Assembly (NCBI GenBank): GCA_965235115.1
Contig: OZ249441.1
Location: 1,612,001-1,676,000, forward strand
Direction of reading: 5' to 3'
Source of the DNA: Laetmonice hystrix
Taxonomy: Eukaryota
DNA: 64,000 bases
Made by a program: the position numbers and the translations under genes
In this document: piece after piece, positions 5,336 through 61,570 of the stretch
Layout of the letters: every line of letters starts with the position of its first letter
Numbering within the stretch: the first letter of the stretch is position 1
Notes under the pieces: generated by a model
Seen by the model: only the letters and a program-made list of their open reading frames with translations
The model's database searches: none
What the model was told of the DNA's origin: nothing

Positions 5336-5505
5336 CCAGGAATCATTTCCCCTAAACCCTCTCGTAAACTGACATGATGAACTGTGTGAGGAAGTACCTG
5401 TGTACCGGTGGTGACTTACCTGTGACCCAGGAATCATTTCCCCCTAAACCCTCTCGTAAACTGACATGATGAAGAAACTGTGTGAGGAAGTGACCTACCT
5501 GTGAC
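5336..5505 (-). repeat. Tandem duplication containing the ARID1 exon 4 donor site
   Basis: cccaggaatcatttccc..taaaccctctcgtaaactgacatgatgaa at 5336 and 5426; gtgac(t/c)tacctgtgac at 5411 and 5490. Confidence 0.9.
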
Positions 5506-5676
5506 TGAGGCGGGTGTATTAGAACGAGATCCTGCCGAACCGACGGGTGATGGTGTTGGGCGGAGGGCTGACACCGCTGGGTGTTGAGGGCCCTGAGACG
5601 TGGGCGTGGTGCGCGAGTTACCACTACTCCCTACGTCACCACCATTTTCATCTGTACTATTGTTGGAAACAGAATC
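5499..5676 (-). CDS. ARID1: ARID1 coding exon 4 (DSVSNN...RPTPSPVGSAGSRSNTPASVT)
   Basis: Acceptor tgttttgcag, donor ACAG|gtaggt, 178 nt phase 0-1; conserved PSPVGS motif. Confidence 0.88.
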
Positions 5677-8600
5677 CTGCAAAACATAAAGATAAATCTA
5701 ATTAAATTTACTTTTCAATATGAAATCTTGCTTCATATCATATCATTGTATATCTATCTTTTCTATGCAGTGGTTTCATATGTCCTTACATAATTACATA
5801 ATTACATAATTAAAGTTAACTGATCAATTACAACCTTGGGATCTTTTCACTTCAGAAACCAAACTTGTTATGTACAATGTAACACGTGAAAATTTCTGAC
5901 CTGGCATTTCTAACTATTTCAAACCGATATAATAGAGCCAGGCAGTATGTAGGAGACATGAGCATATGGTACACAAACGGATGCCAGACCACTGCGAGTT
6001 TACCTCGTCAGTGCCGGACTGCCTTCAATATTTGATGATCCACTTCTGTATCAACTACAGAACCCCCTTCTGGTGACCCAGCATAATCTAGTGACCATCA
6101 CCCAGCTTAGTGTCTGGGCTCAAAGACGACAACCATTCCCTGGGGCCGGCCAGGCTGGCCAGGGTACGGAGGCTGTGAGACTGGAGCCCTAATTGGCTCT
6201 GGGTGATCAAACAGGTCGTGGGATGAGCACAATGGTAGATCGATAGGTGTCACAATGGTTGCCCTGGGCCCCTGCCCCCTCACAGTGCCACTCACAGACT
6301 GCCCCGGTTCTACCCCCACTTGACTCGGCAGCGCCATGCAGTGCGCACCCACAATTACCTCTCAATCCATCATGTGGCTGTCAATAAACAGAACATCTTA
6401 CACCAGACCAGACAGGCTGCACTCTCCGACAAAAGGTTCGATCAATGATCACTACTACCTGTTGCTCACACCATGACGCCCATAATGTGATGGAATGTCA
6501 AGATGATAGCGATCATCCGGGATCATCCAGGTCTCCGCCTTATCTAATCCCCCCTCCCCCTGCCGTACTGCCACCCACATACCTCAATAACATGACTAGA
6601 GAATACCAAGAGAACTACAGTATCTGGATTGCCTTTAAGAACGTGATATCAATACAGTATATTAATATTGAACATACATTTCAGATGGATCGAGATTTAA
6701 ATGACCCCAGAAACCTTGACAACATGGAGTTTATCTGACAAAATGTCCTTGAAGACATCGTCAAGGAGGGTCATTCCTTTACGACTAATAAAATATCGAG
6801 TGAGAGAATTCACTTGTTCACGACAACCCAATGGATCGTAACCTTACGGTAATAAATCATTATTCTCCTCAGGCAATAATTAAAGCAAACATCAGGCAGA
6901 ACAATCCGTGCACAAGTTTTTGTTCACAATACCAGATTGATAGTGAATACCGTGCTGAGGATAAGACTAACAGATAAAGTAACTAAGAATTATACTCCCA
7001 TTATCATTGGCCAACTATTGCTATACCCAGTATGAAAACAAAGTTCTCATTGAAGATATACCTGTATACATGTATATATAATATCACACCGAATCAGGTA
7101 ATCCATTGTCAAATTCCAATGTCATCATTGCGATTACACTTGTTAATCAGTCGGCTAATTTATGGCCACTAAATACAGGCAATTATCCCATAAATACCCT
7201 TCAAACCGAAAGCACAGCCACTGTATGCAAATCAAATATTTTATAATAGCTAGGCCTACATTAGAACCATCCACTGGGGGAAAACAAATATTCAAATCTT
7301 TACACTCCCTCGGGCATCAAACAGATAAATCTTCTAGGTTATCAATTTATCGTTTTCACTTCTTAGGTGAACGCATTCATTACAAAAGGTTTCAATCGCT
7401 GATCGGTACACACAGTATCTGCTAACAATGAACCACTACTACCAGTCAGTATTTGCTCAGATCTTGGCCAGGCATTCTACACGATCACAAACATGATCTG
7501 TGATGACCATTACTATAATATCGTTTGGCAGGTAGATATGTAACTTTAATACATACAGGAGGTTCACTTCTCAAACTTCCTTCCCGATGGTAAATAATAT
7601 CCACAATGAGACAATGGTATGAGACAATGGTACAATACAAGAATGATTGTACCCGGCCCTCAATTACACAAACACTGCATGTCTCCCATGAACAGCAAAA
7701 TCATCAGTGTCTAACTCATCAGAATCAGATCGTTTGGGGTATTTTCTTAAAGGTAAAAAAGACTGATTCAGTGCTTTATAAATCAAAGCGATATCATGCT
7801 TTCAGACTGTTCTATTCAAGTACAATATTTTGCACTGCAATCGTAAATAAATTGTATTCTACATCCAAATCATATTAAGTGACAGTGTTATTTGTTTTTC
7901 CCCCGAATGGTCTAATAATATCCAAACTGAAACAGTTTAATGGAAAGACCCAACACGAGCCACTTGGCATTCAGCTCTGGCAGCAGCCCACACAATGCTG
8001 GGTTGTCATGGAAACAAGAGACCAAGCTGCCCTACCAATCCTTTTCTTGAAGTCAACAAAATGGACCCATCAAAACGCGGCCCTGATGGATACGTTTAAA
8101 AGGCGACATAACAAGTATCTGTCCATCTACTACAGGTATAGTCCTTGACGACCGACTGCCTTGTACCCTGACGACGGGTAGCCCAGCCCTTGTACACTGA
8201 GGACGCCAAGCCAAGCCAAGCCAGAGACTGGCATACTTCACTTCTACTGCTGTCAGCAAAACATTGATTACCAAGCGTACGCTATGACTAGACTACCGAT
8301 CTGTGTGACATCAACAGCAGTATATATCAACGTGACAATCTACAACTTTTCACGCCCCTACAAGGGCGTGAAATGGTGAAAAACTTGTGTTACTCTACCT
8401 CTGTTAACCGGCTTCCCTCCACAAACCTCCATGTCTAAGCCTGTCTGCCGGGCGGCATACATATGCAAATGTCTGAATATTTAATATCCAGCAATCATAA
8501 ACTCAACTATTCCCAGTTAAACCCGCTTTCCAAATTCGATGATGACATTGTCTTTACCCAATGAGCATCTCAGTCTAGCTGTGTCCCTTCAGCCTGCTGA

Positions 8601-11600
8601 GGAGCACCGAGTCCCCAAAGCTGCTGGACTATCTAAACAAAGGCCAGTCTGAATGAGTGAGCCCGTGCCAGTCAACAATGCTGGCACCCCACTTCATACA
8701 AAGGCCCCTATTTATTTTCTGCTTCGCATGCTTCCCACTAGGTCCTAAAAGGAAATAGATAAAACTTGAGCGTTCTTTACCCGTCAACTGCCTGCATCTT
8801 TTCCTCTCCATCCTCCTGTCAAAAAGGCTGCAATGCTACAACTTTGATCTAGTCGGCCTGGCTGAGTCATGTGTGTACTGGGTGCTGCCGAGCGCTGGGC
8901 TTGGCTCTCGCATGGCCCAGCACTGCCACACAGCCCAGCCCAGCGCACCACAGCCAGTGCTGGCTATAAAACCCGGCCAGCACACTTTCTAAATATAACC
9001 TACTTGCAAGCTACCACCACAAGTGCATAAACTAGTGGGGAAACCCTAGCGGAGCCCCATGTAGGTCAGGCGGGAATGATGCTCTCACGCTGGCCAGTCT
9101 TACCTTAGTGGCTGCAGGACTGGGGCCTCATCACTGTTATCATTGGGCCGTGTTGACTTGAAAGTTTAAGTTCTGCACCTGGGGGACGGAGCACATGGCC
9201 CGGTCCATACATAATGGCTCCCCCAGTCTACTGTTTCACAGGTCAATTGAAATGGGATATCTGAGTGGCTGTCGCCCCTAGCTACATGTGGAGCCTCTCT
9301 GGGCCGTATGAATGTTCGGCTACAAAATATACTTTGAACGAACTTATGAAATTCATTTATCTGGGGCGTGTTTCTTTCTGCTGGTTCAGGGCCCGTTTCT
9401 GATATAATGGCTCCACGTACTGGCACATGAAAAACTGGCTGGCATAATTTACATATGCCATTCTTGAATGAATAAGCAATAAGGGACAATACAATCGGTC
9501 CCATTTATCAAACACATGTCAACTATGGGTCGCAGGCTCCCAGCCTGGCCAAAGTGGATAGAATACATACGACATATGTCAGCAGAAATATGCTTTTCGG
9601 CCATGTATTTTCTCCTACAAAAATACTTTCATAATTCAAGCATGTTTTTCTTGTTACTTGAAAACTTCTTTTAAGGTTGCTTCGCTAATTAAATTCGGTT
9701 CTTACACACGCTATTATTGTTCACCCTTTCCTTGAGCCGGCACACATAATGGTTTATTTATAAGAGGCCGAGGTTTGCATTTGCATAAAGTAGTTCCGGC
9801 TGTCAGGCTAATGGCAGGCTACAAAGGCCACTGGCTCAGGCAGTTCAAGTGAGTGCCCAGGTCGCTTTGAGACTGACAGTCGTGTATTCTGGAACTTGCC
9901 GCTCCACCGGCCTGCTTATACATAGACACAAAGAATAGAGTCCGTTCTATGTGCCATACACCTACTCCAGCCGACAGCAGAAAAAAACTCATTCCACAGT
10001 GGTACCATTTCTACTTTACACTGTGGGAGATAGCTCCTGGACTATTTTCTAGCAGCCCTATCACGCCTGGCACATCTCGTGTAATATAAGGCTTTTGCCT
10101 CAGCAAAATCAAGTCCGCCTGCCAGCTTTTGCATAGCAGTAATGCGGCAGAAATAAAATCAATACACAGCACGCACCAGTGCTGCATAGAGTATACCTTG
10201 GCCCGCGGAGCCGGGGGCCCTGATGGGAGATTCACAACGGCTCTTTTTGTACAAATTCATGTTGTTTTTCACGAGATCTAATGATGAAGGCAATTTTTCA
10301 TTGCTGCTTTGAAGTGCCCAATGCATCCGTTATTTAGGTCCCTTTCATGTTGGAAAAAATTAAAGTTCTCCATTACCTGTCAACTTCCCGAGAGCCAAAT
10401 ATTACGCAGAAAATGGGGAGCGTGTTCAGTGACAGCAGCGCCCCCAAGAGCAATCTAGGTGATATGCAGCAGGCGGTGGCGGACGGACGCCCGGCTTGGC
10501 CGGCTGTCTGTCTGCTGGATAACTGGCAGGCTGAAAACTTTGCCATTCAGTGGGGGTGCTCCAGCGACAGATAAGCTTTATTACAAAGCCAGCTGAACCA
10601 AAACTTTACAAGTATACAGTTCACAAGGACCGGAGACTGCTAGGAAATATCTGACCGTGCATTTACACTGGAAAAACAATTTCATGACCCCTTTTTAAAA
10701 ATTTGCAGAGTAAATTTGGGAGCACTTTGCAATATTGCCTGCTGCTGACATGGCAGTACAAACGAAAATTAATGTCACTATAAATTAGGGTTTAACTGAT
10801 ATTATTAGCTGCAGTAACCGAGGTAATCGTTGCCCAGCAGTGAATATTTCATACTCTCATACTTTCACATATTTTTATTTCCACTGTACTACATAACAAA
10901 GTGACTAAGTGTGCAATAAGTTAAATTCAATGGACTGTTTGTATCAATGAAAGGACGATGATTGTGGATGCAGAAAAAAAACGGGCCTTCTCTTGTAACA
11001 TCATATCATCTCCAACATGTGAATATATTACAGCTCTCTACAAACCAATCAGCAAAAAAAATATTGTCATTGCCTCTCAGTTATAACTCAGAAATTTAAT
11101 TTCATACCAGACCCCCCCCCCCCCTCCTGCCCCCGCCCCTTCCAGGAAAAAAAACCTCAAACTATAGCCATAATTTCACAGTGTTACAGAAATTTCACGA
11201 TTTTAGCTGTTTTACCAGGCCCTATTTTTTTTATCATTGTGTCCTCTATTAAACCTTCCCTTATGCCCCATGCAGGGCACATATAAAATTCATCATACAT
11301 GGCTACTAAAATTCCCCTTAAATATTTTCTCAGTGGCTTTGCACTGATAATATTGACCGTAGCTCTCTCCATGGTTTCATGCCATTATTTTATTCCACTT
11401 ATCCGAACACATAAGATTCTATAGCAAAATTACCTTTCCGCCCCTCAACAAATTCACAAAAAAATTATCTATATGCAACTTGCCAATGTTGATGGGCATA
11501 AATTACCGGGCAGTGCCTAATTGATTTTGAGAAAATGGAAACGTGGAGATGATTGATCACCAGTTACTTTGACTCAATATCTGCGGCGGTGGTGGCGGTA

Positions 11601-12678
11601 GTGGCAACGACTCACAGTGGCTGCAGTCGTCGGCTGCCTGCCTGCCTGCCTGCCTGCCGAGCCGGACCACAGCTGCGCGCGGTATCTCGGCAGCCTTGCA
11701 CACCGCCCACCCGCCCGCTCCACTTTGTGCCGCCTTGCCAGAGGAGACCGGCGCACAGCCGCCTGAGTTAGCGACAGCAGTGCAGACCCATACAACTCGG
11801 ATATCGGCCATGCATCATGCTTTGGTTCAAGGTACAAGTCCTTTGAGGAATGGCCCAATCGTAGGATGCATCAAAACTGAGGGGCACTAGGTGCACCCTA
11901 CTGCTGTCACAACCTCCTAAACTCAACCTATAGACCCCAAAAAATACCCCCCACTTCTCACCACGATATATTATCATACATTAAAACAGCCGCCTGCCTA
12001 GCAACCTGAGAGTGAAGCCAGGCTGTCTACGGTCCACGAACAACTGGTTCGGTACACCAACTATCTAAAACACACCATACTATAATACATATCACAACTT
12101 AGCTTGTACCAACAGAATTCATTATTATACGAAAAATTCGATTGATCACTATGCCATTATAAAAACAAATGCATTTAATCCAGTCTCCTAAATTCCTGAT
12201 GTTATTAGTGAAATTTGCCAATCAAAGGCACCCCTCCCTCTTTTTATTCCGGATACATTTTTTAATCTGGATTGTAACTTTCCGTTTGAGTGTTTTCTAA
12301 GGGAATCTAGAATGACCAGTCACTGTGTGCTGAGGTTGTGGAACACACAAACGTAATTACAGCAAGATTCTGTCACAGTGGACACCTTGCTTCCATTCAG
12401 CACCAGCCCCCTTTTACGTTTCTCCTGGGCCCTTTTAGATGTCAATCCCCTAAAGGTTCTCTTGGCCTCTCTGGCCAGCCCGTCCGAGATGGCATGACAA
12501 AAACAGGCGGTCGGAGATTGTTCCAAAATGCACCAATCAAGAGTAATGCCAACGAGGGACAATACACTAAATGCTTGCGAGTAAAGTAAGTGTGGCTGGA
12601 TGGTTGACTGGCCGCGAGTGGAAGCCAACATGTGGGACTGTCACGGTGCCCGACCGCCCCCAGCCCCCTCCCGACCCA

Positions 12679-12793
12679 ACCGTCCTCCACCTCCCGCCCT
12701 CCCGGCCTCCCGCCCCGCCGGCCCCCGGCACACCCGACCGTCCTCCACCTCCCGCCCTCCCGGCCTCCCGCCCCGCCGGCCCCCGGCACACCC
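12679..12793. repeat. GC-rich tandem duplication of about 57 bp
   Basis: ccgtcctccacctcccgccctcccggcctcccgccccgccggcccccggcacaccc twice. Confidence 0.9.
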
Positions 12794-13400
12794 GGTCCCA
12801 ACTCCCCGCTCCCACGCTCAGTGAACGCAGCAGACCATGTAGGCAGTCTGACCCCGTAATGGTTCGACCTGAAACACAGCATCTGTCCTTACTGAAATCT
12901 CATTCTCAAAGCCACCTCCTCATCACTACCAACATTCATACTTTGTCTTCCCAATATCAGAGCATCTCTTTGGCAACACTGTCTTTTTGGAACCAGAATA
13001 TGGGCGTTCTGTGCCTTGTCTGTGCCACGTTGTTAAAGTCAAATACAAGTCAACCATGGCCGGCATGCTCCACATAGTACCTGAGAGCCGGCTTTTTTAA
13101 ACCAACCAAACCAGCACCGACAGCCCGACACAACACACTGCAAACACGTTTCCTTTAAATGGCTCGGTTCTGACAGGTACAAAATGTGCCCACACATTGA
13201 TTTAATCCGTAATTAAGTTTAATATTTGATTACAGGTTATCAAGAAAATAGTCAGCTGGCCAATCTAGCTTCACGTAGGATTTCCAGTATAAATTCTTAC
13301 CCCAAAAAACTAGTCGCGTTGGGTAAATGGTATTTTAAAAAAACTAATCGCGTTAGGTAAATGGTATTCTAAAAATTGAGTGAAATAAATGCCGACCGTG

Positions 13401-14628
13401 CTATTGATACTGATTCATTAACCCATAGACCGACAGATACAACAAACCTATTGATACTGATTCATTAACCCATAGACCGACAGATACAACAAACCTATTG
13501 ATACTGATTCATTAACCCATAGACCGACAGATACAACAAACCTATTGATACTGATTCATTAACCCATAGACTGACAGATACAACAAACCTATTGATACTG
13601 ATTCATTAACCCATAGACCGACAGATACAACAAACCATAACGTGCTATTGATACTGATTCATTAACCCATAGACCGACAGATACAACAAACCATAACGTG
13701 CTATTGATACCGATTCATTAACCCATAGACCGACAGATACAACAAACCTATTGATACTGATTCATTAACCCATAGACCGACAGATACAACAAACCTATTG
13801 ATACTGATTCATTAACCCATAGACCGACAGATACAAACCATAACGTGCTATTGATACTGATTCATTAACCCATAGACCGACAGATACAACAAACCTATTG
13901 ATACTGATTCATTAACCCATAGACCGACAGATACAACAAACCTATTGATACTGATTCATTAACCCATAGACCGACAGATACAACAAACCTATTGATACTG
14001 ATTCATTAACCCATAGACCGACAGATACAACAAACCTATTGATACTGATTCATTAACCCATAGACCGACAGATACAACAAACCTATTGATACTGATTCAT
14101 TAACCCATAGACCGACAGATACAACAAACCTATTGATACTGATTCATTAACCCATAGACCGACAGATACAACAAACCTATTGATACTGATTCATTAACCC
14201 ATAGACCGACAGATACAACAAACCTATTGATACTGATTCATTAACCCATAGACCGACAGATACAACAAACCTATTGATACTGATTCATTAACCCATAGAC
14301 CGACAGATACAACAAACCTATTGATACTGATTCATTAACCCATAGATCGACAGATACAACAAACCATAACGTGCTATTGATACTGATTCATTAACCCATA
14401 GACCGACAGATACAACAAACCTATTGATACTGATTCATTAACCCATAGACCGACAGATACAAACCATAACGTTCTATTGATACTGATTCATTAACCCATA
14501 GATCGACAGATACAACAAACCTATTGATACTGATTCATTAACCCATAGACCGACAGATACAACAAACCTATTGATACTGATTCATTAACCCATAGACCGA
14601 CAGATACAACAAACCATAACGTGCTATT
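13401..14628. repeat. 47 bp minisatellite, about 25 copies with 54-57 bp variants
   Basis: ctattgatactgattcattaacccatagaccgacagatacaacaaac repeated; some units add cataacgtg. Confidence 0.97.
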
Positions 14629-49968: not shown

Positions 49969-50036
49969 GTATTTAAACATTCTGGATAATTTTGATAAGA
50001 TGAATGTATTCTTTAACAGCCACCTTATCGGCATAG

Positions 50037-50037
<1 letters not shown>

Positions 50038-50067
<30 letters not shown>

Positions 50068-50079
50068 CTTCTTCTTCTT
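50038..50079. repeat. (CTT)n microsatellite
   Basis: About 14 copies. Confidence 0.95.
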
Positions 50080-50173
50080 TTTTATAGCTTTTATATAAAA
50101 GCGTCATTTAATAATGTATTGTTGCAAAATATATAATAAATAACGTAAAATGACAACGTGCATACTTCCACAG

Positions 50174-50345
50174 GGATCGAGTTTTGTGGACAATTCAAGC
50201 GGGTCAAGTTCACGGCCTACTGGAACCTGTTCTGGGCGAGCGGATACTGCAGTTTCGCCGCAGTGGCCTATCTACTCCGACGTTGGCGTTACCTGCACCT
50301 TGTGTCCGTATTGCCCGAGATACCCTTCTTCCTGGCCTATCTCAT
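50174..50345 (+). CDS. SLC22 exon 4 (IEFCG...FFLAYL)
   Basis: ttccacag / gtgagt, 172 nt, phase 1-2. Confidence 0.9.
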
Positions 50346-50383
50346 GTGAGTCGCTCTTCATGAGTCGCTCTTCATATATAAGA

Positions 50384-50716
50384 TACGGAGCCCCTAAGGA
50401 GACACGAGTGTAAACAAAGTTATACATTATATCGTTTCGTCGAAATGATTTCGTGGGAACGAAATAACATATTTCGTTCCGTCGAAATCATTTTGAGGGA
50501 ACCAAATAATATATTTCGTTCCGTCGAAATCATTTTGAGGAAACGAAATAACATATTTCTTTGCCTCGAAATCATTTTGAGGGAACGAATTATGTTATTT
50601 CGTTCCCACGAAATCATTTCGAGTGAACGAAATATGTTATTTTCTTTCCTCAAATAATTTCGAGGCAACTAAATAACATAATTTTGCCCCACCTATGTCC
50701 CCTTAGGGGCTCCGTA
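50384..50716. mobile_element. MITE with 16 bp TIR (including TA) and internal degenerate palindromic repeats of about 42 bp
   Basis: TACGGAGCCCCTAAGG / CCTTAGGGGCTCCGTA; TA ends suggest a Tc1/mariner-type TSD (inference). Confidence 0.85.
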
Positions 50717-50718
50717 AT

Positions 50719-50935
50719 AGGCAGCGTGGATCCATTATTAAAATGCAATGCTGCATGCAGGACCATCAAGTTGTCAAGGTTCAAACCACGAGCACTGGAG
50801 GGTAAACAGGACCGACGGGACTCTATAGGCCTAGGGTCTCTATATCGTTTAGAGTTGACGAAATATATGAGGGTGATCATTCCAACAATAAGCCTACTGC
50901 ATGTCAAACTTGTGATGTATGCTGCACTATACATC
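50719..50935 (+). mobile_element. Possible decayed tRNA-derived SINE
   Basis: B-box-like GGTTCAAACC near 50778 with a GC-rich head; no full cloverleaf. Confidence 0.3.
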
Positions 50936-50978
50936 GTCCAAAAAAAGCCAGCTTACGAACGTCTCGTGTTTCTTCTAG

Positions 50979-51108
50979 TTTTCTCCCAGAATCACCACGT
51001 TGGTTACTTCTTAAAAATCGCGACAAGGAGGTTCATAAGGTCATCGAAAGTATGGCACGGTGTAACGGATCGAAACTTCCCGACGGCTGGAGTGTTGTTG
51101 ACACCCAG
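50979..51108 (+). CDS. SLC22 exon 5 (FLPESPRWLLLK...WSVVDTQ)
   Basis: tttcttctag / gtaagt, 130 nt, phase 2-0; PESPRW motif. Confidence 0.92.
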
Positions 51109-53075
51109 GTAAGTATGATCGTTACTGACTTCAGACTGAAAGTATGGCAAGGTGTAACGGATCGAAACTTCCCGACGGCTGGAGTGTTGTTGACACCCAG
51201 GTAAGTATGATCGTTACTGACTTCATACTGAAAGTATGGCAAGGTGTAACGGATCGAAACTTCCGGACTGCTGGAGTGTTGTTGACACCCAGGTAAGTAT
51301 GATCGTTACTGACTTCATACTGAAAGTATGGCAAGGTGTAACGGATCGAAACTTCCCGACGGCTGGAGTGTTGTTGACACCCAGGTAAGTATGATCGTTA
51401 CTGACTTCATACTGAAAGTATGGCAAGGTGTAACGGATCGAAACTTCCGGACTGCTGGAGTGTTGTTGACACCCAGGTAAGTATGATCGTTACTGACTTC
51501 ATACTGAAAGTATGGCACGATGTAACGGGTCGAAACTTCCCGACGGCTGGAGTGTTGTTGACACCCAGGTAAGTATGATCGTTACTGACTTCATACTGAA
51601 AGGATCGAAACTTCCGGACGACTGGAGTGTTGTTGACACCCAGGTAAGTATGATCGTTACTGACTTCATACTGAAAGTATGGCAAGGTGTAACGGGTCGA
51701 AACTTCCGGACTGCTGGAGTGTTGTTGACACTCAGGTAAGTATGATCGTTACTGACTTCATACTGAAAGTATGGCAAGGTGTAACGGATCGAAACTTCCG
51801 GACTGCTGGAGTGTTGTTGACACTCAGGTAAGTATGATCGTTACTGACTTCATACTGAAAGTATGGCAAGGTGTAACGGATCGAAACTTCCGGACTGCTG
51901 GAGTGTTGTTGACACCCAGGTAAGTATGATCGTTACTGACTTCATACTGAAAGTATGGCAAGGTGTAACGGATCGAAACTTCCGGACAGCTGGAGTGTTG
52001 TTGACACTCAGGTAAGTATGATCGTTACTGACTTCATACTGAAAGTATGGCAAGGTGTAACGGATCGAAACTTCCGGACTGCTGGAGTGTTGTTGACACT
52101 CAGGTAAGTATGATCGTTACTGACTTCATACTGAAAGTATGGCAAGGTGTAACGGATCGAAACTTCCGGACTGCTGGAGTGTTGTTGACACTCAGGTAAG
52201 TATGATCGTTACTGACTTCATACTGAAAGTATGGCAAGGTGTAACGGATCGAAACTTCCCGACGGCTGGAGTGTTGTTGACACCCAGGTAAGTATGATCG
52301 TTACTGACTTCATACTGAAAGGATCGAAACTTCCGGACGGCTGGAGTGTTGTTGACACTCAGGTAAGTATGATCGTTACTGACTTCATACTGAAAGGATC
52401 GAAACTTCCGGACGGCTGGAGTGTTGTTGACACTCAGGTAAGTATGATCGTTACTGACTTCATACTGAAAGGATCGAAACTTCCGGACGGCTGGAGTGTT
52501 GTTGACACTCAGGTAAGTATGATCGTTACTGACTTCATACTGAAAGTATGGCAAGGTGTAACGGATCGAAACTTCCCGACGGCTGGAGTGTTGTTGACAC
52601 CCAGGTAAGTATGATCGTTACTGACTTCATACTGAAAGGATCGAAACTTCCGGACGGCTGGAGTGTTGTTGACACTCAGGTAAGTATGATCGTTACTGAC
52701 TTCATACTGAAAGTATGGCAAGGTGTAACGGGTCGAAACTTCCCGACGGCTGGAGTGTTGTTGACACCCAGGTAAGTATGATCGTTACTGACTTCATACT
52801 GAAAGTATGGCAAGGTGTAACGGATCGAAACTTCCGGACAGCTGGAGTGTTGTTGACACCCAGGTAAGTATGATCGTTACTCACTTAATACTGAAAGTAT
52901 GGCAAGGTGTAACGGATCGAAACTTCCGGACAGCTGGAGTGTTGTTGACACCCAGGTAAGTATGATCGTTACTGACTTCATACTGAAAGTATGGCAAGGT
53001 GTAACGGATCGAAACTTCCGGACAGCTGGAGTGTTGTTGACACCCAGGTAGGTATCGTTGCTGCCTTCATACTTG
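51046..53075 (+). repeat. Tandem array (92 and 75 bp units) of the exon 5 3' end plus donor site, 23 donor copies
   Basis: gaaagtatggc..gtgttgttgacac(c/t)CAG|GTAAGTATgatcgttactgacttcatact; GT at 51109, 51201 ... 52956, 53048. Confidence 0.97.
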
Positions 53076-53193
53076 TTCGATTACCTCGATAAAAGAACTT
53101 TATGGCTTGAAAGGTGTCTCTTACCAAACCTTTACCATAACGCTTGTATAGAAAATTATCAAAATTATATCCTGACACCGTCTCTTTCAACAG

Positions 53194-53276
53194 AGTAACG
53201 AAAAGAGGGGGAGCTGCTTGGACCTTTTCAAGACACCACGTTTACGTTTGATAACCATCGTTCTTGCCTATATATT
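53194..53276 (+). CDS. SLC22 exon 6 (SNEKRGSCLDLFKTPRLRLITIVLAYI)
   Basis: ctttcaacag / gtaagt, 83 nt, phase 0-2; DLFxTPxLR motif. Confidence 0.9.
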
Positions 53277-53682
53277 GTAAGTACAGCCACATACCGCTAC
53301 TGAATCCCAATATACAATGTGTCTGCTTTCATTTTTGTTATTTCATATATGTAACGTAGTTGATAACATACTATGTAATAATCTTGACTGTGAACATATT
53401 ATTTTGAATGGCCAAAATAGTATTGGCTACTGTTGTGTACTGTTATTGTACTGTTGTGCCCATAGGCCTGCTATAGGCCTATGCTACCACACTTTCAGGC
53501 CCGAGTAGCTGTGCTATAGGTTATTTCCCCCATGGTAACTTCCCCACAACCTTTTTGGGCAGGGAGTTATGGGTTAAGGTCAGTGATAGGGATAGGATAA
53601 TGATATGTTTTTGAGAGGTGTATACCTGACTTCAAACCCCACGTGCGCTTATTATTCTATGTATGCAACAAACTTTTTCCAG

Positions 53683-53897
53683 CTTCGCCAACTCGTTTGT
53701 GTATTACGGATTTTCAATGAACACTTCTAACCTGGCTGGCGACCCGTTCCTCAACTGTTTCCTCAGTGGCCTGGTCGACATACCTGTCGCTGCTTTCCTC
53801 TATTTCTGCTACGACCGCTTCCCCCGGGTCCCACTCTTCGCCACACTGATGTTGGCGGCAGGAGTCGCCCAAATGTTATCGCTCACCGTCTCGACAG
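53683..53897 (+). CDS. SLC22 exon 7 (FANSFVYYG...LTVST)
   Basis: tttttccag / gtaggc, 215 nt, phase 2-1. Confidence 0.92.
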
Positions 53898-54124
53898 GTA
53901 GGCATTACAAGTACATGTACATGTAATCACTGTAGGGCATCGTCAGTGGTACATCGCCCGTGATAACTTAAACCCCGCGAAATTTGGTCGAAACTAAAGA
54001 ACCATAGCCTGACTTTATCTCTAACCCCGGTCCCTACACCTCCCAAAAACATGTCCCTATTCCATCCCTATCCATGACCTTAAGCCGAACCCCTGGCAAA
54101 ACGTTTTGTTGGGAAGTTACGTGC

Positions 54125-54225
54125 AAGTGGTTCTGGCTGGAGGGGGATTCGAACCCAGACGTGACAGACCCTGTTGGTCAAGGAACCAGAGCTTTAGACC
54201 ACAGCACTGAGCTTTGCCCACCACA
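54125..54225 (-). mobile_element. tRNA-derived SINE head
   Basis: Minus strand A-box-like TGGTCTAAAGC (54201-54191) and B-box GGTTCGAATCCC (54155-54144). Confidence 0.6.
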
Positions 54226-54234
54226 AGCCATCGT

Positions 54235-54570
54235 CAGGGCCGTGCCCAGAGATTGGTGCAGGGGGGGGGGGGGGGGGGGTTACTGCCAATACTGGTGCAG
54301 GGGAGGGGGGTTATTCAATTCAATTCAATTCAATGGACTTTATTGCGGACACATCTACATAGTATGATAATACATAGAGGTCCATAGAAACTGGGAACTA
54401 AAGACTAAAGACTAAAGACTAGAACATCAGCTAACCAGAGCCAATGTGTAGCAAGTTACAGTGGACAGACCCAAGTGTTAGGACCTAAAAAAAACTAAAA
54501 ATAAAAAAATCTTTGGCACCCAGGGGGGGTTACAGACATCCACCCCCCCCCCCCCCTTGGCACGGCCCTG
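54235..54570. mobile_element. MITE, 336 bp, 5 bp TSD, carrying a retroposon 3' end with (ATTCA)n tail
   Basis: CAGGGCCGTGCC / GGCACGGCCCTG; ATCGT on both flanks; (ATTCA)4 at 54313-32 next to TTTATT. Confidence 0.85.
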
Positions 54571-54804
54571 ATCGTGGATTGCAGTATTTATGGCAAACAC
54601 CGTCCAACGACAGACCGACCAGCCTCACCATATACCTCTCAAGTACTGCACAGTGTATCGAAACCAGGTGTGAAAGGAATGGAGATCTGTCGGATCTAGA
54701 TTCCCTGGTTATGCAGGTCCTGGGTAATCACCTTTGTGGTATGAGATATTATGATAGAATTCTGCAGTTCGTCGTCACATATACTCAGTAGGCCTATAGG
54801 GTCT

Positions 54805-55850
54805 GACGACAGGTAATCACTGTAGGGCGTCACGACAGGTATAATCACTGTAGGGCGTCACGACAGGTACTCACTGTAGGGCGTCACGACAGGTACTCAC
54901 TGTAGGGCGTCACGACAGGTACTCACTGTAGGGCGTCACGACAGGTACTCACTGTAGGGCGTCACGACAGGTAATCACTGTAGGGCGTCACCACAGGTAC
55001 TCACTGTAGGGCGTCACCACAGGTAATCACTGTAGGGCGTCACCACAGGTAATCACTGTAGGGTGTCACCACAGGTACTCACTGTAGGGCGTCACCACAG
55101 GTACTCACTGTAGGGCGTCACCACAGGTACTCACTGTAGGGCGTCGCGACAGGTAATCACTGTAGGGCGTCACCACAGGTACTCACTGTAGGGCGTCACG
55201 ACAGGTACTCACTGTAGGGCGTCACCACAGGTAATCACTGTAGGGCGTCACGACAGGTATAATCACTGTAGGGCGTCACGACAGGTACTCACTGTAGGGC
55301 GTCATCACAGGTACTCACTGTAGGGCGTCACGACAGGTAATCACTGTAGGGCGTCACGACAGGTACTCACTGTAGGGCGTCACCACAGGTAATCACTGTA
55401 GGGCGTCACGACAGGTATAATCACTGTAGGGCGTCACCACAGGTACTCACTGTAGGGCGTCACCACAGGTAATCACTGTAGGGCGTCACCACAGGTAATC
55501 ACTGTAGGGCGTCACCACAGGTAATCACTGTAGGGCGTCACCACAGGAACTCACTGTAGGGCGTCACCACAGGTAATCACTGTAGGGCGTCATCACAGGT
55601 AATCACTGTAGGGCGTCATCACAGGTAATCACTGTAGGGCGTCATCACAGGTAATCACTGTAGGGCGTCATCACAGGTAATCACTGTAGGGCGTCACCAC
55701 AGGTACTCACTGTTGGGCGTCACCACATGTAGGCCTACTCACTGTAGGGCATCACCACAGGTAATCACTGTAGGGCGTCATCACAGGTAATCACTGTAGG
55801 GCGTCACCACAGGTAATCACTGTAGGGCGTCACGACAGGTAATCACTGTA
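54805..55850 (+). repeat. 26 bp minisatellite, about 40 copies, related to the exon 7 donor junction
   Basis: cgtca(c/t)(g/c)aCAG|GTA(a/c)tcactgtaggg. Confidence 0.96.
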
Positions 55851-56415
55851 CGGCCTATGTCGGAGATCAAACATCCCATCCCATACGGACACGTTTCGGA
55901 GACAGAATTTAAAAAAAAAAGCTCCATGTTTGTGTCCGTGACAGGCCCATCACTAGCCTGGTGCCCTGTGCCTACCATACGCATCCCCTATGTTAGGCCG
56001 GGTGATGGCTAACAGAAAGCTGCGAAACGGAAGTGATTAATCTTCAAGCACTTCCGCTTCCGTTCTGTTGGTCAGCGTTAACAGAGTGACCGACTTCTGC
56101 TTGGAGCGTGGCCGGGAGTGGCCAACATGCCACTGCGTATGCAGACCGTAGCAGGTGTGGGGACTGATGACGCTATGTTTAGGCCTACATCCAGAAAAGC
56201 GAGGACATTTAACACTTGTATTTTAAAGGGATTGATGAAAATATCTGTATCTTGTTGGAGAAATACGGAGGGTACGGAACCACCTCGTTTGCGTCCATGT
56301 TTTCGATGGGCCAATCACAACGCTCGCTTCGATTGGCCTTCACCAGGCTCAATATAGGCCTACGTAGTCAATATAGAGCTGGGGACCAGGCCAGCCCATC
56401 ACCGGAATATATGTC

Positions 56416-56539
56416 CAGGGCCGTAGCCTGGCCCAAATGCGTGGGGGGGGGGGGGGGGTTAAAAAAACACAAAAAAAACTGGAAATCCCAGGGGGCAGCT
56501 GCCCCCCTGCCCCCCCCCCCCCCGCAGGCTACGGCCCTG
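56416..56539. mobile_element. Short MITE (124 bp)
   Basis: 15 bp perfect TIR CAGGGCCGTAGCCTG / CAGGCTACGGCCCTG with internal poly-G/poly-C; TSD not clean. Confidence 0.8.
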
Positions 56540-56650
56540 TGTACTAATATATATATAGTCCTAAACTCAATAAACAGCAATAAACATCAATGTCAGACCT
56601 TGTGTCGGCCTATTTATGTTGTTTTTTGATAAAAGACAACTTGTTTGCAG

Positions 56651-56835
56651 ACGAGCTGTGGTGGCTAACGGTGTCAATGTCCATGGTAGGCAAACTGTTC
56701 ATCGCGGCCACATTCCTCATCACGTGGCTCGTGGTAACGGAAGTCTTTCCCACGGCTGTGCGGGGGGTCGGGTTAGGCCTGACAAACAGTGCCGCCCGAC
56801 TGGCTGCCTTTGTGGCTGCCTATGTGGGCATGTTG
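56651..56835 (+). CDS. SLC22 exon 8 (DELWW...GKLF...EVFPTAVRG...AARLAAF...GML)
   Basis: ttgtttgcag / gtaagc, 185 nt, phase 1-0. Confidence 0.93.
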
Positions 56836-57075
56836 GTAAGCTCGTGAACTCGTTCACCGGTCATTCTGCAATAGGTTAATTTGTTAAATTATTCTTACTT
56901 TTGAATTATGATTGCATGAATTTGTATTCAAGAAGGTTGCCTTAATATAAACGGCGTTATTTTTACATAAATAGCCGAAAGTAATTTGGGTTGCCATATG
57001 AGCTGGCCATGTGTAGGCAGACCATCAGAAACCATACAAGGCAAACGCTCTAACCTATTACGTTGTTCTTTACAG

Positions 57076-57233
57076 GGACGTATCCACCCGTCACTGCCCG
57101 TGATAGTGTTTGCCAGTTCAGCCCTCCTGGCTGGTTCTTTGGTTCTCATTCTTCCCGAAACTCGCGGAGTTGTCCTGCCTCAGACTGTCGACGAAGGCGA
57201 ACGATTTCTGGCCGCACATATGTTCGATATCTG
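57076..57233 (+). CDS. SLC22 exon 9 (GRIHPSLP...LPETRG...MFDI); alternatively reads on to a stop at 57246
   Basis: ttctttacag acceptor; LPET motif; weak donor gtgcgc. Confidence 0.85.
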
Positions 57234-57486
57234 GTGCGCTAAATGATTTCTCTCGTCTACATTTGTGTATATATGGTTATTTGGAGAAACGCAGGAACCC
57301 AATAACAACCTAAAAGGCAAATCGTTACCAGTGTTTTCTTTGTTTTAACGATTTATGATAGAATACCGACATATTGATTATTTATTATCATATTATATTT
57401 TGTAGAATCTTTTTATCACTTACGGCATTTTTCTCTGAGGTATTTTACCAATATCTACATATATATCGGCTCTCTTTACATTGCAG

Positions 57487-57559
57487 TCGTTCGAAGCGTA
57501 TCAAACACGGTCAGCATCCAGAGGCTAACGAGCAGCACCATCCAACGAGCAATATCTAA
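57487..57559 (+). CDS. SLC22 probable last exon (RSKRIKHGQHPEANEQHHPTSNI*)
   Basis: Pyrimidine-rich acceptor ctctctttacattgcag; in phase with exon 9 (158+73 nt = 77 codons). Confidence 0.55.
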
Positions 57560-57791
57560 ATTTAATATCGAAATATTTTTATATCGCCTAGCTTTTGTCA
57601 TCAGTAGATCACTAGGCCAAAGTAACGGCACATACCTCTCATCAGGGCCAATCGTAAAGTTGCATTGTCTCGAGAAAAACGGAGTCATACTTTAACAAAA
57701 GTACTGCTAGTAATACTGTAGTAAGTGAGGCATTATTCCCTGCTAAATCGGATGGTTTCATCGCCGTATTGGATCATACCTGATCATACTA

Positions 57792-57995
57792 CAGTGGGGG
57801 ATCAAGGATTTTGATAAGGGGGGGTGGGGGGAACCAGGATTTTAATAAGGGTAAGCCCATCAGGACTTTGATAAGGGGGGGCTACCTAAATTTTTTGCCT
57901 CGTTATGCTCGGCTTTTGATTTTGACTGTACTAATGCATCTTCATCGAACCAAAAAAAAAAAGGGAAAATCTAAGGGGGCCCTAGATCCCCACTG
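57792..57995. mobile_element. MITE, 204 bp, 5 bp TSD
   Basis: CAGTGGGGGATC / GATCCCCACTG; TACTA on both flanks. Confidence 0.85.
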
Positions 57996-58587
57996 TACTA
58001 TGCAATATTCGGCGGCATGTAGAAAAGCCGCTACATCGACACAGGTATGACACTAAGAGTTTGTAGGTACGGTCGCACCACACGCCTTTGTATCTTGTTG
58101 TATATAGACCTAGAGATGTACATTGTATACAAATTTCCGTAATCTAGCCTTTTTCGTAAAGACCTAAAATCAAATAAACATATTACTCGTTTCCAGATTA
58201 CAAACCCTGTCTTTCCGTCAACCCATTTATTATACCTTTGTTTTGTACCATTGATGGAAGGACGACCAATGAATGCGTTGTGATAATCTTTCACGAATGT
58301 AGCCGACAAGTTACACTAGTGTCACAATAGTGTGGATGGTATCCGAGTTGTGTAGCAGAAGATTGAACAAAGTTAGGTCAGCAAGGAAGCATCATCTTTA
58401 TTCCTGACAGCTTGATTCTATGTACAAATTCCAAACGTTATACTGAGACATACAACAGACAGCGGAGGTGTCGCAGTTTATGAAAGAGACTTGAAATCAT
58501 TGTTAACACAGTTCCACCACCCCGGAACTGTTTCAAAAGTTCCCGATTGTATGCAATACAATGTATGTATTAACGGCATCTTCCTAA

Positions 58588-58673
58588 TGTGTTCTTCTCC
58601 CTTGTAAACACCTTTCCCACCACTCTACTGTGTGTTCTTCTCCCTTGTAAACACCTTTCCCACCACTCTACTG
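58588..58673. repeat. Perfect 43 bp tandem duplication
   Basis: tgtgttcttctcccttgtaaacacctttcccaccactctactg twice. Confidence 0.93.
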
Positions 58674-59494
58674 TCGTGGTCGTCCATAACGGAATGATTT
58701 TACAGTCAAAATAGCAGCAACTCATTTTAAAGTACACAATGTATTTACAATTTATATATTTCGACGACATTCCTTTAATAAACAGTCCGTTAAATTTTAA
58801 AATGACACAAAATCAGAAAAAGATCTCCCTAGAGCTAGTAATGACGTGATTTATAACCTCAACCAAGGAACGAGTCCCCACTCCCTCCTTAAAAACAGAA
58901 TTTTCACATCTCAACTGCAATATAGCGATGAGATTCCAGTCTTGATCAAAACAGATCATGATTATTTCTGATTGTGAAAATAGATTTCCCGCTAAAATAA
59001 TGCTAGCCACTGTGTTGTCAAAATTGTCTCTTCAAAATTGTCTCGATACTTTTACATAATTATGACTGTATGCAATGGATATTGTATTTTCATAGAAAAC
59101 GAATCCAGTTTAAAATCTGACTGGAAACCATTATACATTTTAATATGGCAACTAGTGCTGCAAGTGGATGACTTCTTTTAATGAAAACGTATACTATGGC
59201 AAACACATCCCATCCCACGCCGTCTCCGTACCAAACCTTATCACTGTGTAGTCTGTGGACTACACATGTATTTGAAATAAGACCAATGCGTTGTTTGTCC
59301 CCATTTTTATGACATTATATAACATTGCTCCATTGGAGAGAAGAAAACCTCACAATTCCTGCATCTTTTGTTGTAATGGTACATTAAACATCACTTTCAC
59401 TCTTAACTTGATTGGCCATTACCCTCACACACCTGTCACCTTTAACAGCTCCAACCCCTGATGTACAAGTCTTCGGTGCGTTTGTTTACGACTC

Positions 59495-59602
59495 TCATGA
59501 GAATGTAGCCAAGTGAGCAGGCATTGGTTTCCCATCGTGCCGCAGTACGATAGGTCCTTTATAATAACGCCAGAACATACTGGAACCACGCTTGATGTTA
59601 CC
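59495..59602 (-). CDS. MTCH2: MTCH2 last exon (GNIKRGSSMFWR...ATFS*)
   Basis: gtttgcctgcag acceptor; TGA at 59497-95. Confidence 0.9.
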   Translation of the reverse strand, partial: GNIKRGSSMFWRYYKGPIVLRHDGKPMPAHLATFS

Positions 59603-59726
59603 CTGCAGGCAAACAAAGCATTCAAATTAAAAAAATATCTGCAACCTGCAATGCAATGTCTTGCTGGATTTGTATTGTTTAGACATGAAAACCATGAAGA
59701 CAGTACTAATATTATTATATACCAAC

Positions 59727-59802
59727 CTCTTTAAGAAGTGATGAAAAGCACTTCGTCCAGCTAGCATAATTTGGCATATGAGGTGGAGATCCAGCAGCTA
59801 AC
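59727..59802 (-). CDS. MTCH2: MTCH2 exon (LAAGSPPHMPNYASWTKCFSSLLKE)
   Basis: gatttgtag / gttggt, 76 nt, phase 2-0. Confidence 0.9.
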
Positions 59803-60001
59803 CTACAAATCCAATGTATAAGTTATACATAAGGTAAACAATAATCTCTGTTGCCTTTAACACAGGTATTATAACTTCATGACTTTTCCATAGTAAACCT
59901 CCCAAATTTCATGACCAATTCCGAATAAAATTAATCGAATACATTAAAATCCCAGAATTATCCCCTAGTACATCGTGAAGCTTTATAATTTAGGCCCAAC
60001 A

Positions 60002-60435
60002 CAGGGTGTATCCACTAGGTTTCAATATTTTTTCCATGACTTTTTCATGACTTTTCCATGCCCAAAGCTATAAAATCAAGGACCTTTTTACATGCTTCGT
60101 GGTATGAAAGAGACATGTGCTGAGGCAAGGAGGAAGGGTCAGACAGGCCATGATTTGGAGTCAATTGGAATAGAATGTGATGAAAGATTAAATCACAGTG
60201 ACTTTAATTATATGTCATAATACAACCAACTCTGATTGACACTTAAAACCTAACAAAATCACAATGGCATATCAAGAAAGTAACAACGCCGTTTTGCGAA
60301 AGCATGCCTTTTAATTTCCATGACTTTTCAATGACCTCAGCCCAAAATAAGTCAATTTCCATGACTTTTACAGGCCTGGAAAAAAAAAAGGAATTCCATG
60401 ACTTTTCCAGGTTTTCCATGACTGGATACACCCTG
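60002..60435. mobile_element. MITE, 434 bp, 6 bp TSD, within remains of a related element (to about 60579)
   Basis: CAGGGTGTATCCA / TGGATACACCCTG; CCAACA on both flanks; tttccatgac subterminal repeats inside and outside. Confidence 0.88.
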
Positions 60436-60666
60436 CCAACACTAACAGAAACAAAAATGTGGTTCAGGAGAAATGTCAAATTCCATGCCTTTTTCATGAC
60501 TTTCCCTAGTTTTTCTATTTTCCATGACTTTGAAAACCAAATTTTATTTCCATGACTTTTCATGACAGTTGGAACCCCGCAATATCTTTTGTATCAAACT
60601 TTCCCCATTACAGCTACACTGCTTACACAAATAATGTCTATCGTGGCTGTCAGAGAAGGTAACACC

Positions 60667-61570
60667 TCCTTACCCACAGCCTACATTGGAAACCTACTTA
60701 CCCACAGCCACTGACTGCCATGACATTGGAGACCTACTTACCCACAGCCACTGACTGCCATGACATTGGAGACCTACTTACCCACAGCCACTGACTGCCA
60801 TGACATTGGAGACCTACTTACCCACAGCCACTGACTGCCATTACATTGGAGACCTACTTACCCACAGCCTACATTGGAAACCTACTTACCCACAGCCACT
60901 GACTGCCATGACATTGGAGACCTACTTACCCATAGCCACTGACTGCCATGACATTGGAGACCTACTTACCCACAGCCACTGACTGCCATGACATTGGAGA
61001 CCTACTTACCCACATTGGAGACCTACTTACCCACAGCCACTGACTGCCATGACATTGGAGACCTACTTACCCACAGCCACTGACTGCCATGACATTGGAG
61101 ACCTACTTACCCACAGCCACTGACTGCCATAACATTTGAGACCTACTTACCCACAGCCTACATTGGAGACCTACTTACCCACAGCCACTGACTGCCATGA
61201 CATTGGAGACCTACTTACCCACAGCCACTGACTGCCATGACATTGGAGACCTACTTACCCACAGCCACTGACTGCCATGACATTGGAGACCTACTTACCC
61301 GCAGCCACTGACTGCCATGACATTGGAGACCTACTTACCTGCAGCCACTGACTGCCATGACATTGGAGACCTACTTACCCACAGCCACTGACTGCCATGA
61401 CATTGGAGACCTACTTACCCACAGCCACTGACTGCCACGACATTGGAGACCTACTTACCCACAGCCACTGACTGCCACGACATTGGAGACCTACTTACCC
61501 GCAGCCACTGACTGCCATGACATTGGAGACCTACTTACCCACAGCCACTGACTGCCATGACATTGGAGAC
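60667..61570 (-). repeat. 40 bp tandem array of the MTCH2 exon 3' end plus donor site, 24 donor copies
   Basis: Minus strand gtctccaatgtcatggcagtcagtggctgTGG|GTAAGTAG; 28 and 21 bp variants. Confidence 0.97.

What the first reader, a model, noticed from the sequence alone, without database searches (positions are those of the whole stretch)
5336..61570. Recurrent tandem amplification of exon-end plus 5' splice site junctions in all three genes (splice-donor arrays)
Seen: four independent repeats are built from the last exon bases and the donor GT. They are ARID1 exon 4 (2 copies), SLC22 exon 5 (23), SLC22 exon 7 (about 40, displaced) and an MTCH2 exon (24); a 14 bp duplication also sits at the SLC22 exon 4 donor. 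None is seeded on an acceptor junction. In each case the most upstream junction keeps the frame and any distal copy introduces a premature stop or frameshift. Established: U1 snRNP binds 5' splice sites and suppresses premature polyadenylation (telescripting), and PTC isoforms go to NMD. Inference: either donor junctions are hot spots for repeat birth (pausing or R-loop-linked slippage) in this lineage, or the arrays act as tunable U1 landing pads or poison-donor rheostats whose copy number sets gene output. I do not know of this being described as a system.
Basis: partly seen in the sequence, partly recalled or inferred. Interest (0 to 1): 0.85.

Follow-up and report, generated by a model that had tools for sequence, protein, structure and literature searches.

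The report
Minisatellites that copy exon-end splice donors
Several introns here begin with tandem arrays that repeat the last bases of the exon plus its splice donor. This is real, but it is a known kind of boundary-spanning minisatellite ("mirage"), found here in a very repeat-rich mollusc-like genome, and the one case with RNA data still splices from the first donor.

Summary
Two arrays begin inside an exon and repeat its end plus the GT donor: an SLC22-like exon 5 (92 nt, 23 donors) and an MTCH2-like exon (40 nt, about 22). A 26-nt, 40-copy array derives from the SLC22 exon 7 junction but sits 0.9 kb away, behind an inserted dispersed repeat. ARID1-like exon 4 has a two-copy duplication starting 5 nt before its donor. 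The 14-nt duplication at exon 4 carries no second GT.

The interpretation as an undescribed system does not hold. Boundary-spanning minisatellites are published as amphioxus "mirages" and in human F7, IFI6, CBS, LMNB2 and PDGF. This genome is not amphioxus; a netrin exon matches molluscs best.

Tandem arrays cover 16-22% of the DNA I sampled. A random locus holds an acceptor-junction array on the same exon as a donor array, so the pattern is not donor-specific. Whole-genome counts of donor motifs in arrays equal a reversed-motif control, while counts of distinct arrays suggest 1.3-4x.

One spliced RNA contig joins the first MTCH2 donor to the next exon.

Other first-stage readers noted similar donor and acceptor arrays elsewhere in this genome.

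Best reading: near-random minisatellite births, tolerated where the authentic site still wins.

The parts
50979..51108 (+). SLC22-like exon 5 (…FLPESPRWLL…VVDTQ), authentic donor at 51108|51109
   Evidence: tblastn of full-length MFS/SLC22 homologues hits 50980-51084. Pfam Sugar_tr E=6e-4. Sequence read.
51046..53073 (+). Junction minisatellite. The 92-nt unit is the last 58 nt of exon 5 plus GTAAGT and 28 more intron nt. About 23 units, some 75 nt long.
   Evidence: TRF, sequence, 22 CAGGTAAGT + 1 CAGGTAGGT.
53194..53276 (+). SLC22-like exon 6 (SNEKRGSCLDLFKTPRLRLITIVLAYI), in frame only with the first exon 5 donor
   Evidence: Sequence and frames. Splice sites inferred.
53683..53897 (+). SLC22-like exon 7, donor ACAG|GTAGGC
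   Evidence: tblastn hits 53630-53896, sequence.
53915..53946 (+). Solo copy of the 26-nt unit, 20 nt behind the exon 7 donor. It marks where the array was seeded.
   Evidence: Only match in the window outside the array: 2 mismatches in 22 nt, exact 16-mer E=5e-4.
54121..54235 (.). Dispersed short repeat inserted between the exon 7 junction and the array
   Evidence: 40 scored copies of 152 candidates on many contigs, 79-94% identity. ARAGORN finds no tRNA.
54809..55854 (+). 26-nt x 39.8 array (GTCACGACAG|GTAATCACTGTAGGGC) derived from the exon 7 junction
   Evidence: TRF, sequence, 38 ACAGGT.
61539..61742 (-). MTCH2-like exon (…TYPFSLVSNVMAVSGCG), authentic donor at 61539|61538
   Evidence: Spliced RNA contig, record 26 of run X4. 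Mito_carr-type lead only.
60683..61571 (-). Junction minisatellite. The 40-nt unit is the last 32 nt of the exon plus GTAAGTAG. About 22 units.
   Evidence: TRF, sequence. Collapsed unit contigs in DNA runs have 14-36x the depth of the flanking contigs (table 8).
59727..59802 (-). Next MTCH2-like exon (GLAAGSPPHMPNYASWTKCFSSLLKE), joined in RNA to the first donor
   Evidence: The loose end of the RNA contig at 61537 equals 59771-59800. The 3' end of this exon is inferred.
5499..5676 (-). ARID1-like exon 4, donor ACAG|GTAGGT
   Evidence: ORF and splice motifs. An ARID domain hit lies 25 kb further on the same strand. No RNA or homology support for this exon itself.
5336..5503 (-). Two-copy duplication of about 85 nt, each copy starting CACAG|GTA. 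The second donor reads CAG|GTAAGT.
   Evidence: Sequence. Not reported by TRF.
50347..50375 (+). 14-nt duplication starting at +2 of intron 4. The second copy has no GT.
   Evidence: TRF, sequence.

Best explanation
These are boundary-spanning minisatellites of the 'mirage' / F7-IVS7 type in a lophotrochozoan (mollusc-like) genome where tandem arrays of 15-180-nt units make up about a sixth to a fifth of the DNA.

A short segment that happens to straddle an exon's 3' end and its GT donor is duplicated in tandem and then expands by slippage or unequal exchange (inferred). The first unit remains the true exon end. All further units lie downstream and are removed with the intron, so the array is tolerated.

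Arrays seeded wholly inside coding sequence would be purged (inferred). Junction-spanning arrays are therefore the exon-derived arrays that remain visible.

Shown: the anatomy, first-donor use in the MTCH2-like gene, and the presence of both donor and acceptor cases in the genome.

Inferred: neutrality, and the birth mechanism.
For: - Anatomy.
- Array load: 15.7% of 200 kb of random loci and 22% of the window.
- The GT sits at no fixed place in the unit. Exon share is 58, 32, 10 and 5 nt in the window and 13 and 49 nt in L001 and L003. This argues for seeds that merely overlap the junction, not breakpoints set by it.
- Random loci hold the same structures. L001 has a C-type-lectin exon (Pfam E=1.4e-5) with a 32-nt x47 donor array and a 64-nt x17 acceptor array on its other side. 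L003 has a 55-nt x4 donor array behind an exon that I read as TMC-like by eye only (no Pfam hit).
- Whole-genome triple-motif counts, donor versus reversed control: 1006/805, 628/1212 and 5269/5099, about parity in total.
- The RNA contig joins 61539 to 59802, which is the first donor.
- Published precedent that reiterated donors stay silent: PMC1557585, PMC3087553, PMC3902484.
Against: - Small-sample tests hint at more donor-bearing arrays than chance. PWM score of 9 bits or more: 8 units against about 2.5-3 expected.
- Distinct AGGTAAGT arrays number 9 in 31 Mb against 5 control arrays in 74 Mb.
- 3-4 donor-junction arrays were found in 200 kb, against roughly 0.75 expected under an assumed exon density.
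- All distal donors are intact consensus sites, so they could bind U1.
- RNA evidence covers one gene and comes from one assembled contig, which cannot show rare or NMD-degraded isoforms.
Confidence: 0.68

Rival explanations
1. Splice junctions are mutational hot spots for minisatellite birth in this lineage, for example through transcription- or splicing-coupled pausing or R-loops, or through a recombination-prone CAGGTGGG-like core that resembles a donor. The arrays themselves would have no function.
For: Donor PWM excess in array units. Distinct-array counts are 1.3-4x over reversed-motif controls. There are 3 of about 22 donors affected in this window and 3-4 cases in 200 kb of random DNA. 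Several units carry GGCAGGTGGG-like cores.
Against: Copy-weighted whole-genome counts are at parity. The 7-mer distinct-array ratio of about 1.3-1.7x is what uniform seeding plus real donors would give. The junction position within the unit varies from 5 to 58 nt of exon. The window was chosen for this feature.
Confidence: 0.2
2. The arrays are selected regulatory devices: stacks of U1-binding sites (telescripting or retention pads) or poison donors whose copy number tunes output through NMD.
For: 22-38 intact consensus donors per array. Every distal donor leads to a stop or frameshift. The SLC22 exon 5 unit also reads CCCAG|GTAAGT, a recursive-splice-like motif.
Against: Acceptor-junction arrays occur as well (unchecked notes), so there is no donor-specific logic. 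The host genes are unrelated. The RNA contig uses the first donor at depth 116, against 2.6-5.7 for array sequence collapsed over about 22 copies. Copies are 92-98% alike, as in young or homogenised neutral arrays. Human and amphioxus precedents show silent pseudo-sites.
Confidence: 0.07
3. The arrays are assembly artefacts from over-expansion of a short duplication.
For: None specific. Tandem arrays are a known weak point of assemblies.
Against: In three DNA runs the collapsed 70-nt unit contigs have depth 794-1024, against 27-56 for flanking single-copy contigs. That is 14-36 copies (table 8). The runs come from the same sample, so this shows presence in the reads, not independence.
Confidence: 0.03

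Closest known systems
Amphioxus 'mirages' (Adh3, globins BflGb6/BflGb9, TnC, PGBD5)
   Same: [quoted passage not shown] Units are 10-160 nt. Both 5' and 3' boundaries can be involved (PMC3087553, PMC3902484).
   Different: Different phylum: the netrin exon matches molluscs at 80-82% and amphioxus at 65-72%. Copy numbers here are higher (22-47). Three unrelated neighbouring genes are affected. Allelic or somatic instability was not examined.
Human F7 IVS7 37-bp VNTR, and the IFI6, CBS, LMNB2 and PDGF boundary minisatellites
   Same: The first monomer spans the exon-intron boundary, so identical 5' pseudo-sites follow the authentic donor. For F7, LMNB2 and PDGF only the most upstream site is used (PMC1557585). 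The MTCH2-like RNA contig here shows the same.
   Different: The human cases are isolated loci. Here arrays make up 16-22% of the DNA sampled and junction arrays recur. No mutational or minigene data exist for this organism.
Intron gain by tandem duplication of an AGGT proto-splice site (Rogers model)
   Same: Tandem duplication creates extra donor/acceptor pairs. The L001 acceptor array forms AG|19 nt|GT mini-units.
   Different: No new intron is shown here. The arrays lie inside existing introns.

Membership tests
Boundary-spanning minisatellite ('mirage' / F7-IVS7 type) | Tandem array whose first unit spans a real exon-intron boundary, so the splice-site sequence is reiterated in the intron | tested here: met
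   SLC22 exon 5 and the MTCH2-like exon. ARID1-like exon 4 has two copies. The exon 7 array is displaced but traceable to the junction.
Boundary-spanning minisatellite ('mirage' / F7-IVS7 type) | The exon and its splice site are genuine (RNA or homology) | tested here: met
   MTCH2-like: spliced RNA contig. SLC22-like: tblastn and Pfam. ARID1-like exon 4 rests only on ORF, motifs and a downstream ARID hit.
Boundary-spanning minisatellite ('mirage' / F7-IVS7 type) | The mature mRNA uses the authentic site and the reiterated sites stay silent | tested here: inconclusive
   Met for the MTCH2-like gene by one assembled contig joining 61539 to 59802. No RNA data for the SLC22-like or ARID1-like genes. 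Contigs cannot show rare isoforms.
Boundary-spanning minisatellite ('mirage' / F7-IVS7 type) | Copy-number polymorphism or instability between alleles | not tested
Boundary-spanning minisatellite ('mirage' / F7-IVS7 type) | Either boundary (5' or 3') can be amplified | tested here: met
   L001 3206-4289: the unit ends ...ttgcttag|ACTGCCCACCTGGCTGGGC, the start of a Lectin_C exon. None in the window itself.
U1 telescripting or decoy-5'ss regulatory element | U1 occupancy and an effect on premature polyadenylation, retention or output that depends on site number | not testable with these tools
   Only the motif count is known.
Recursive splice site | Pyrimidine tract + AG|GTAAGT used as a 3' and then a 5' site | tested here: inconclusive
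   The motif CCCAG|GTAAGT is present in each SLC22 exon 5 unit. Its use is not testable.

The most novel reading that the evidence does not exclude
In this genome, exon-intron junctions of both kinds are several-fold over-represented as seeds of minisatellites. The resulting stacks of intact splice sites would then measurably shape splicing (recursive or decoy use, NMD leak) or feed intron birth. That would make the genome a natural library of hundreds of splice-site competition experiments.
Probability: 0.15. Interest if true: 0.65.

Novelty: new member of a known kind. Interest (0 to 1): 0.35.

Why it matters
If junction-spanning arrays are as frequent here as the samples suggest, the genome offers many natural tests of how a spliceosome chooses among identical donors or acceptors, and of the 'mirage' route to new introns. 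So far such cases are reported only from a few amphioxus and human genes. As it stands, the finding mainly extends a known curiosity to a lophotrochozoan and shows that the first donor is the one used in the one gene with RNA data. It also warns annotators that these arrays create long runs of perfect decoy splice sites.

Tried and rejected
- **Amphioxus origin:** rejected. The netrin exon's best named hits are molluscs at 80-82%, against 65-72% for Branchiostoma. Chromosomes are 55-74 Mb. The species was not identified.
- **Donor-only rule:** rejected by the L001 acceptor array.
- **Assembly artefact:** rejected by depth ratios.
- **Acceptor PWM enrichment:** none, but the PWM also missed the real L001 acceptor array, so the test is weak.
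- **ORF-across-boundary screen of all arrays:** too noisy to use.
- **Laying reads across the whole MTCH2 array:** Only the upstream part was laid, so distal-donor use could not be read directly.
- **RNA for the SLC22-like and ARID1-like genes:** not obtained.
- **Canestro et al. 2002 (PMC117041):** not held. It is cited only through PMC3087553.
- **tRNA origin of the inserted repeat:** not supported by ARAGORN.
- **Pfam:** no hit for the MTCH2-like, ARID1-like, SLC22 exon 7 or the L003 (TMC-like by eye) exon pieces.
Full report
**What is in the sequence**

TRF finds 16 arrays with period of at least 12 nt and about 3 or more copies in the 64-kb window. Together they cover 22% of it. Four repeats involve an exon end.

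1. **SLC22-like exon 5.** The gene lies on the + strand. Its exons were placed by tblastn with full-length MFS/SLC22 homologues and by reading. Exon 5 (50979-51108) encodes ...FLPESPRWLL...DGWSVVDTQ and ends CCCAG|GTAAGT.
   - The array 51046-53073 starts 63 nt before the donor.
   - Its 92-nt unit holds 58 nt of exon and 34 nt of intron. Some units carry a 17-nt deletion.
   - It contains 22 CAGGTAAGT and one CAGGTAGGT.
   - Exon 6 (53194-53276) is in frame only with the first donor. A second-donor product adds 92 nt and meets TGA in exon 6.

2. **MTCH2-like exon.** On the - strand, the exon 61539-61742 ends GGCTGTGG|GTAAGTAG. The 40-nt unit (32 nt exon plus 8 nt intron) is repeated about 22 times down to 60683. 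Read-through gives GGG TAA at once.

3. **SLC22-like exon 7.** The 26-nt, 39.8-copy array at 54809-55854 lies 0.9 kb behind exon 7 (53683-53897).
   - Its only other match in the whole window is 53915-53946, which is 20 nt behind that donor (2 mismatches in 22 nt; exact 16-mer, E=5e-4).
   - The exon end CGTCTCGACAG|GTA matches the unit's CGTCACGACAG|GTA.
   - The DNA between them holds a dispersed repeat (54121-54235) with at least 40 copies elsewhere in the genome.
   - An insertion that split the array from its seed is therefore plausible.

4. **ARID1-like exon 4.** This exon (5499-5676, - strand) is followed by two copies of about 85 nt, each beginning CACAG|GTA. An ARID domain hit lies 25 kb further on the same strand. 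The exon itself has no RNA or homology support.

The 14-nt duplication at 50347-50375 begins at +2 of intron 4, and its second copy has no GT. No array in the window spans an acceptor. The 50-nt x3 array at 3358-3506 stops 15 nt short of one.

**Are the arrays real, and which donor is used?**

Four public runs from one sample hold the locus.

- In three DNA runs the collapsed 70-nt unit contigs have depth 794-1024. Flanking single-copy contigs have depth 27-56. That corresponds to 14-36 copies, so the array is present in the reads.
- Run X4 is RNA. One 793-nt contig (depth 116) is spliced through seven exons with GT..AG joints on the - strand.
- That contig ends at 61537 with a loose end identical to 59771-59800, which is the next exon.
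- Allowing for the 2-nt GT ambiguity, the join is 61539 to 59802. This is the first donor, and it gives ...VSGCG|LAAGSPP in frame.
- Array sequence appears in RNA only at depth 2.6-5.7, summed over about 22 collapsed copies. That is what intronic pre-mRNA would give.
- This is one gene and one assembled contig. Rare or NMD-degraded isoforms would not be seen.

**What organism is this?**

- The genome is 627 Mb in 35 contigs, and the two largest are 74 and 55 Mb.
- A 364-aa netrin exon from a random locus has its best named matches in molluscs (Sinanodonta 82%, Lottia 81%, Gigantopelta, Solemya and Littorina 80%).
- The same exon matches brachiopods and a nemertean at 70-75% and Branchiostoma at 65-72%.
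- It is therefore a lophotrochozoan, probably a mollusc, and not an amphioxus. The species was not identified.

**The genome at large**

I could fetch only 20 random 10-kb loci. Arrays cover 15.7% of them, with 55 arrays of period at least 12 nt and at least 3 copies. They contain the same structures.

- **L001:** an exon with a Pfam Lectin_C match (E=1.4e-5) ends DFYIG|GTGAGT and is followed by a 32-nt x47 array (13 nt exon plus donor).
- **L001, other side of the same exon:** it is preceded by a 64-nt x17 array whose unit ends ttgcttag|ACTGCCCACCTGGCTGGGC. That is the acceptor plus the first 19 nt of the exon.
- **L001, second case:** a 20-nt x16 array follows ...HVCELRILG with GGGCAG|GTACGT.
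- **L003:** an exon that I read as TMC-like by eye (no Pfam hit) ends ...LLVIVPQ|GTGAGC and carries a 55-nt x4 donor array. Its two other donors have arrays 65 and 105 nt away that do not span the junction.

Junction arrays therefore recur, and they are not limited to donors. Other first-stage readers noted at least seven acceptor arrays and several donor arrays elsewhere in this genome. These notes are unchecked.

**Is the junction favoured beyond chance?**

- **In the window:** 0.31 donor-spanning arrays are expected and 3 are seen (P about 0.004). The window was selected from more than 170, so about one such window is expected by chance.
- **PWM test:** in 69 distinct arrays, units scoring at least 9 bits on a generic donor PWM number 8. 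Shuffles give 2.5 and reversed units give 3.
- **Whole-genome match counts.** These are matches to three spaced copies of a donor word, compared with the same word read backwards:

| Donor word | Period | Donor matches | Reversed control |
|---|---|---|---|
| AGGTAAGT | 18-48 nt | 1006 | 805 |
| AGGTGAGT | 18-48 nt | 628 | 1212 |
| GGTAAGT | 48-78 nt | 5269 | 5099 |

  The totals are 6903 against 7116, which is parity. These counts are weighted by copy number.
- **Distinct arrays on contig 1:** 9 in 31 Mb against 5 in 74 Mb for the 8-mer, and about 8 in 2.7 Mb against 10 in 5.9 Mb for the 7-mer. That is 1.3-4x.
- A ratio near 1.5 is what uniform seeding would give. About 1.4% of arrays would then span a donor, and a quarter of donors read GGTAAGT.
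- The junction lies anywhere in the unit (5 to 58 nt of exon). This speaks against breakpoints set by the splice site.

I conclude that any enrichment is modest and unproven.

**Comparison with what is known**

[quoted passage not shown] It shows for F7 that only the most upstream of identical donors is selected.
- PMC3087553 and PMC3902484 describe amphioxus 'mirages' at Adh3, globin, TnC and PGBD5 genes. These occur at both boundary types, without aberrant mRNA, and were proposed as a source of new introns.
- The present arrays meet the defining anatomy and, for one gene, the splicing behaviour.
- New here are the lineage, the high copy numbers, and a background in which arrays make up a sixth to a fifth of the DNA.

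**Verdict**

The claim that this is an undescribed system is not.

The best explanation (about 0.68) is near-random minisatellite birth in a hyper-repetitive genome, with arrays tolerated where the authentic splice site still wins. A junction hot spot (about 0.2) and a regulatory role (about 0.07) remain possible. Both need an annotated, genome-wide permutation test and isoform data.

Noticed in passing
L001:2962-4289 (G000:C1:1002962-1004289): One C-type-lectin exon is flanked on both sides by junction arrays: a 64-nt x17 acceptor array upstream and a 32-nt x47 donor array downstream. In the acceptor array each unit forms AG|19 nt|GTATAC, a potential mini-exon.
   Followed up: partly
window:3358-3506: A 50-nt x3 array ends 15 nt before the ARID1-like exon 5 acceptor. 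Each unit carries a (T/C)TTCAG|A acceptor-like motif, but no exon sequence is included.
   Followed up: partly
window:52231-52608: The 75-nt variant units of the exon 5 array are a multiple of three and free of stops. Four in a row form a 125-codon open frame (GSKLPDGWSVVDTQVSMIVTDFILK repeated).
   Followed up: no
window:50428-50680 and L008:7037-7338: A 42-nt unit with internal inverted symmetry (TATTTCGTTCC..GGAACGAAATA) occurs in SLC22 intron 4 and again on another chromosome. It is probably a dispersed MITE-like element.
   Followed up: no
window:54121-54235: A short interspersed repeat with at least 40 copies at 79-94% identity across many contigs. It contains a GGTTCGAATCC box-B-like motif on the - strand and is flanked by long G runs. 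ARAGORN finds no tRNA.
   Followed up: partly
window:61542-63863: DNA contigs of the same sample differ from the assembly at about 1% of sites and between runs, so the individual is highly heterozygous.
   Followed up: no
window:23-770: A compound 77-179-nt array whose units contain GCTAACCCTAAC, a fragment like the telomere repeat (TTAGGG-type), lies far from a contig end (1.6 Mb into C6).
   Followed up: no
L017:1924-5664, L012:6025-7785, L007:5224-6315: The random loci also hold a 1247-aa LINE-like ORF (endonuclease/RT), a 587-aa open frame read by eye as an MFS-type transporter (not checked against any library), and the first netrin exon that I used for taxonomic placement.
   Followed up: partly
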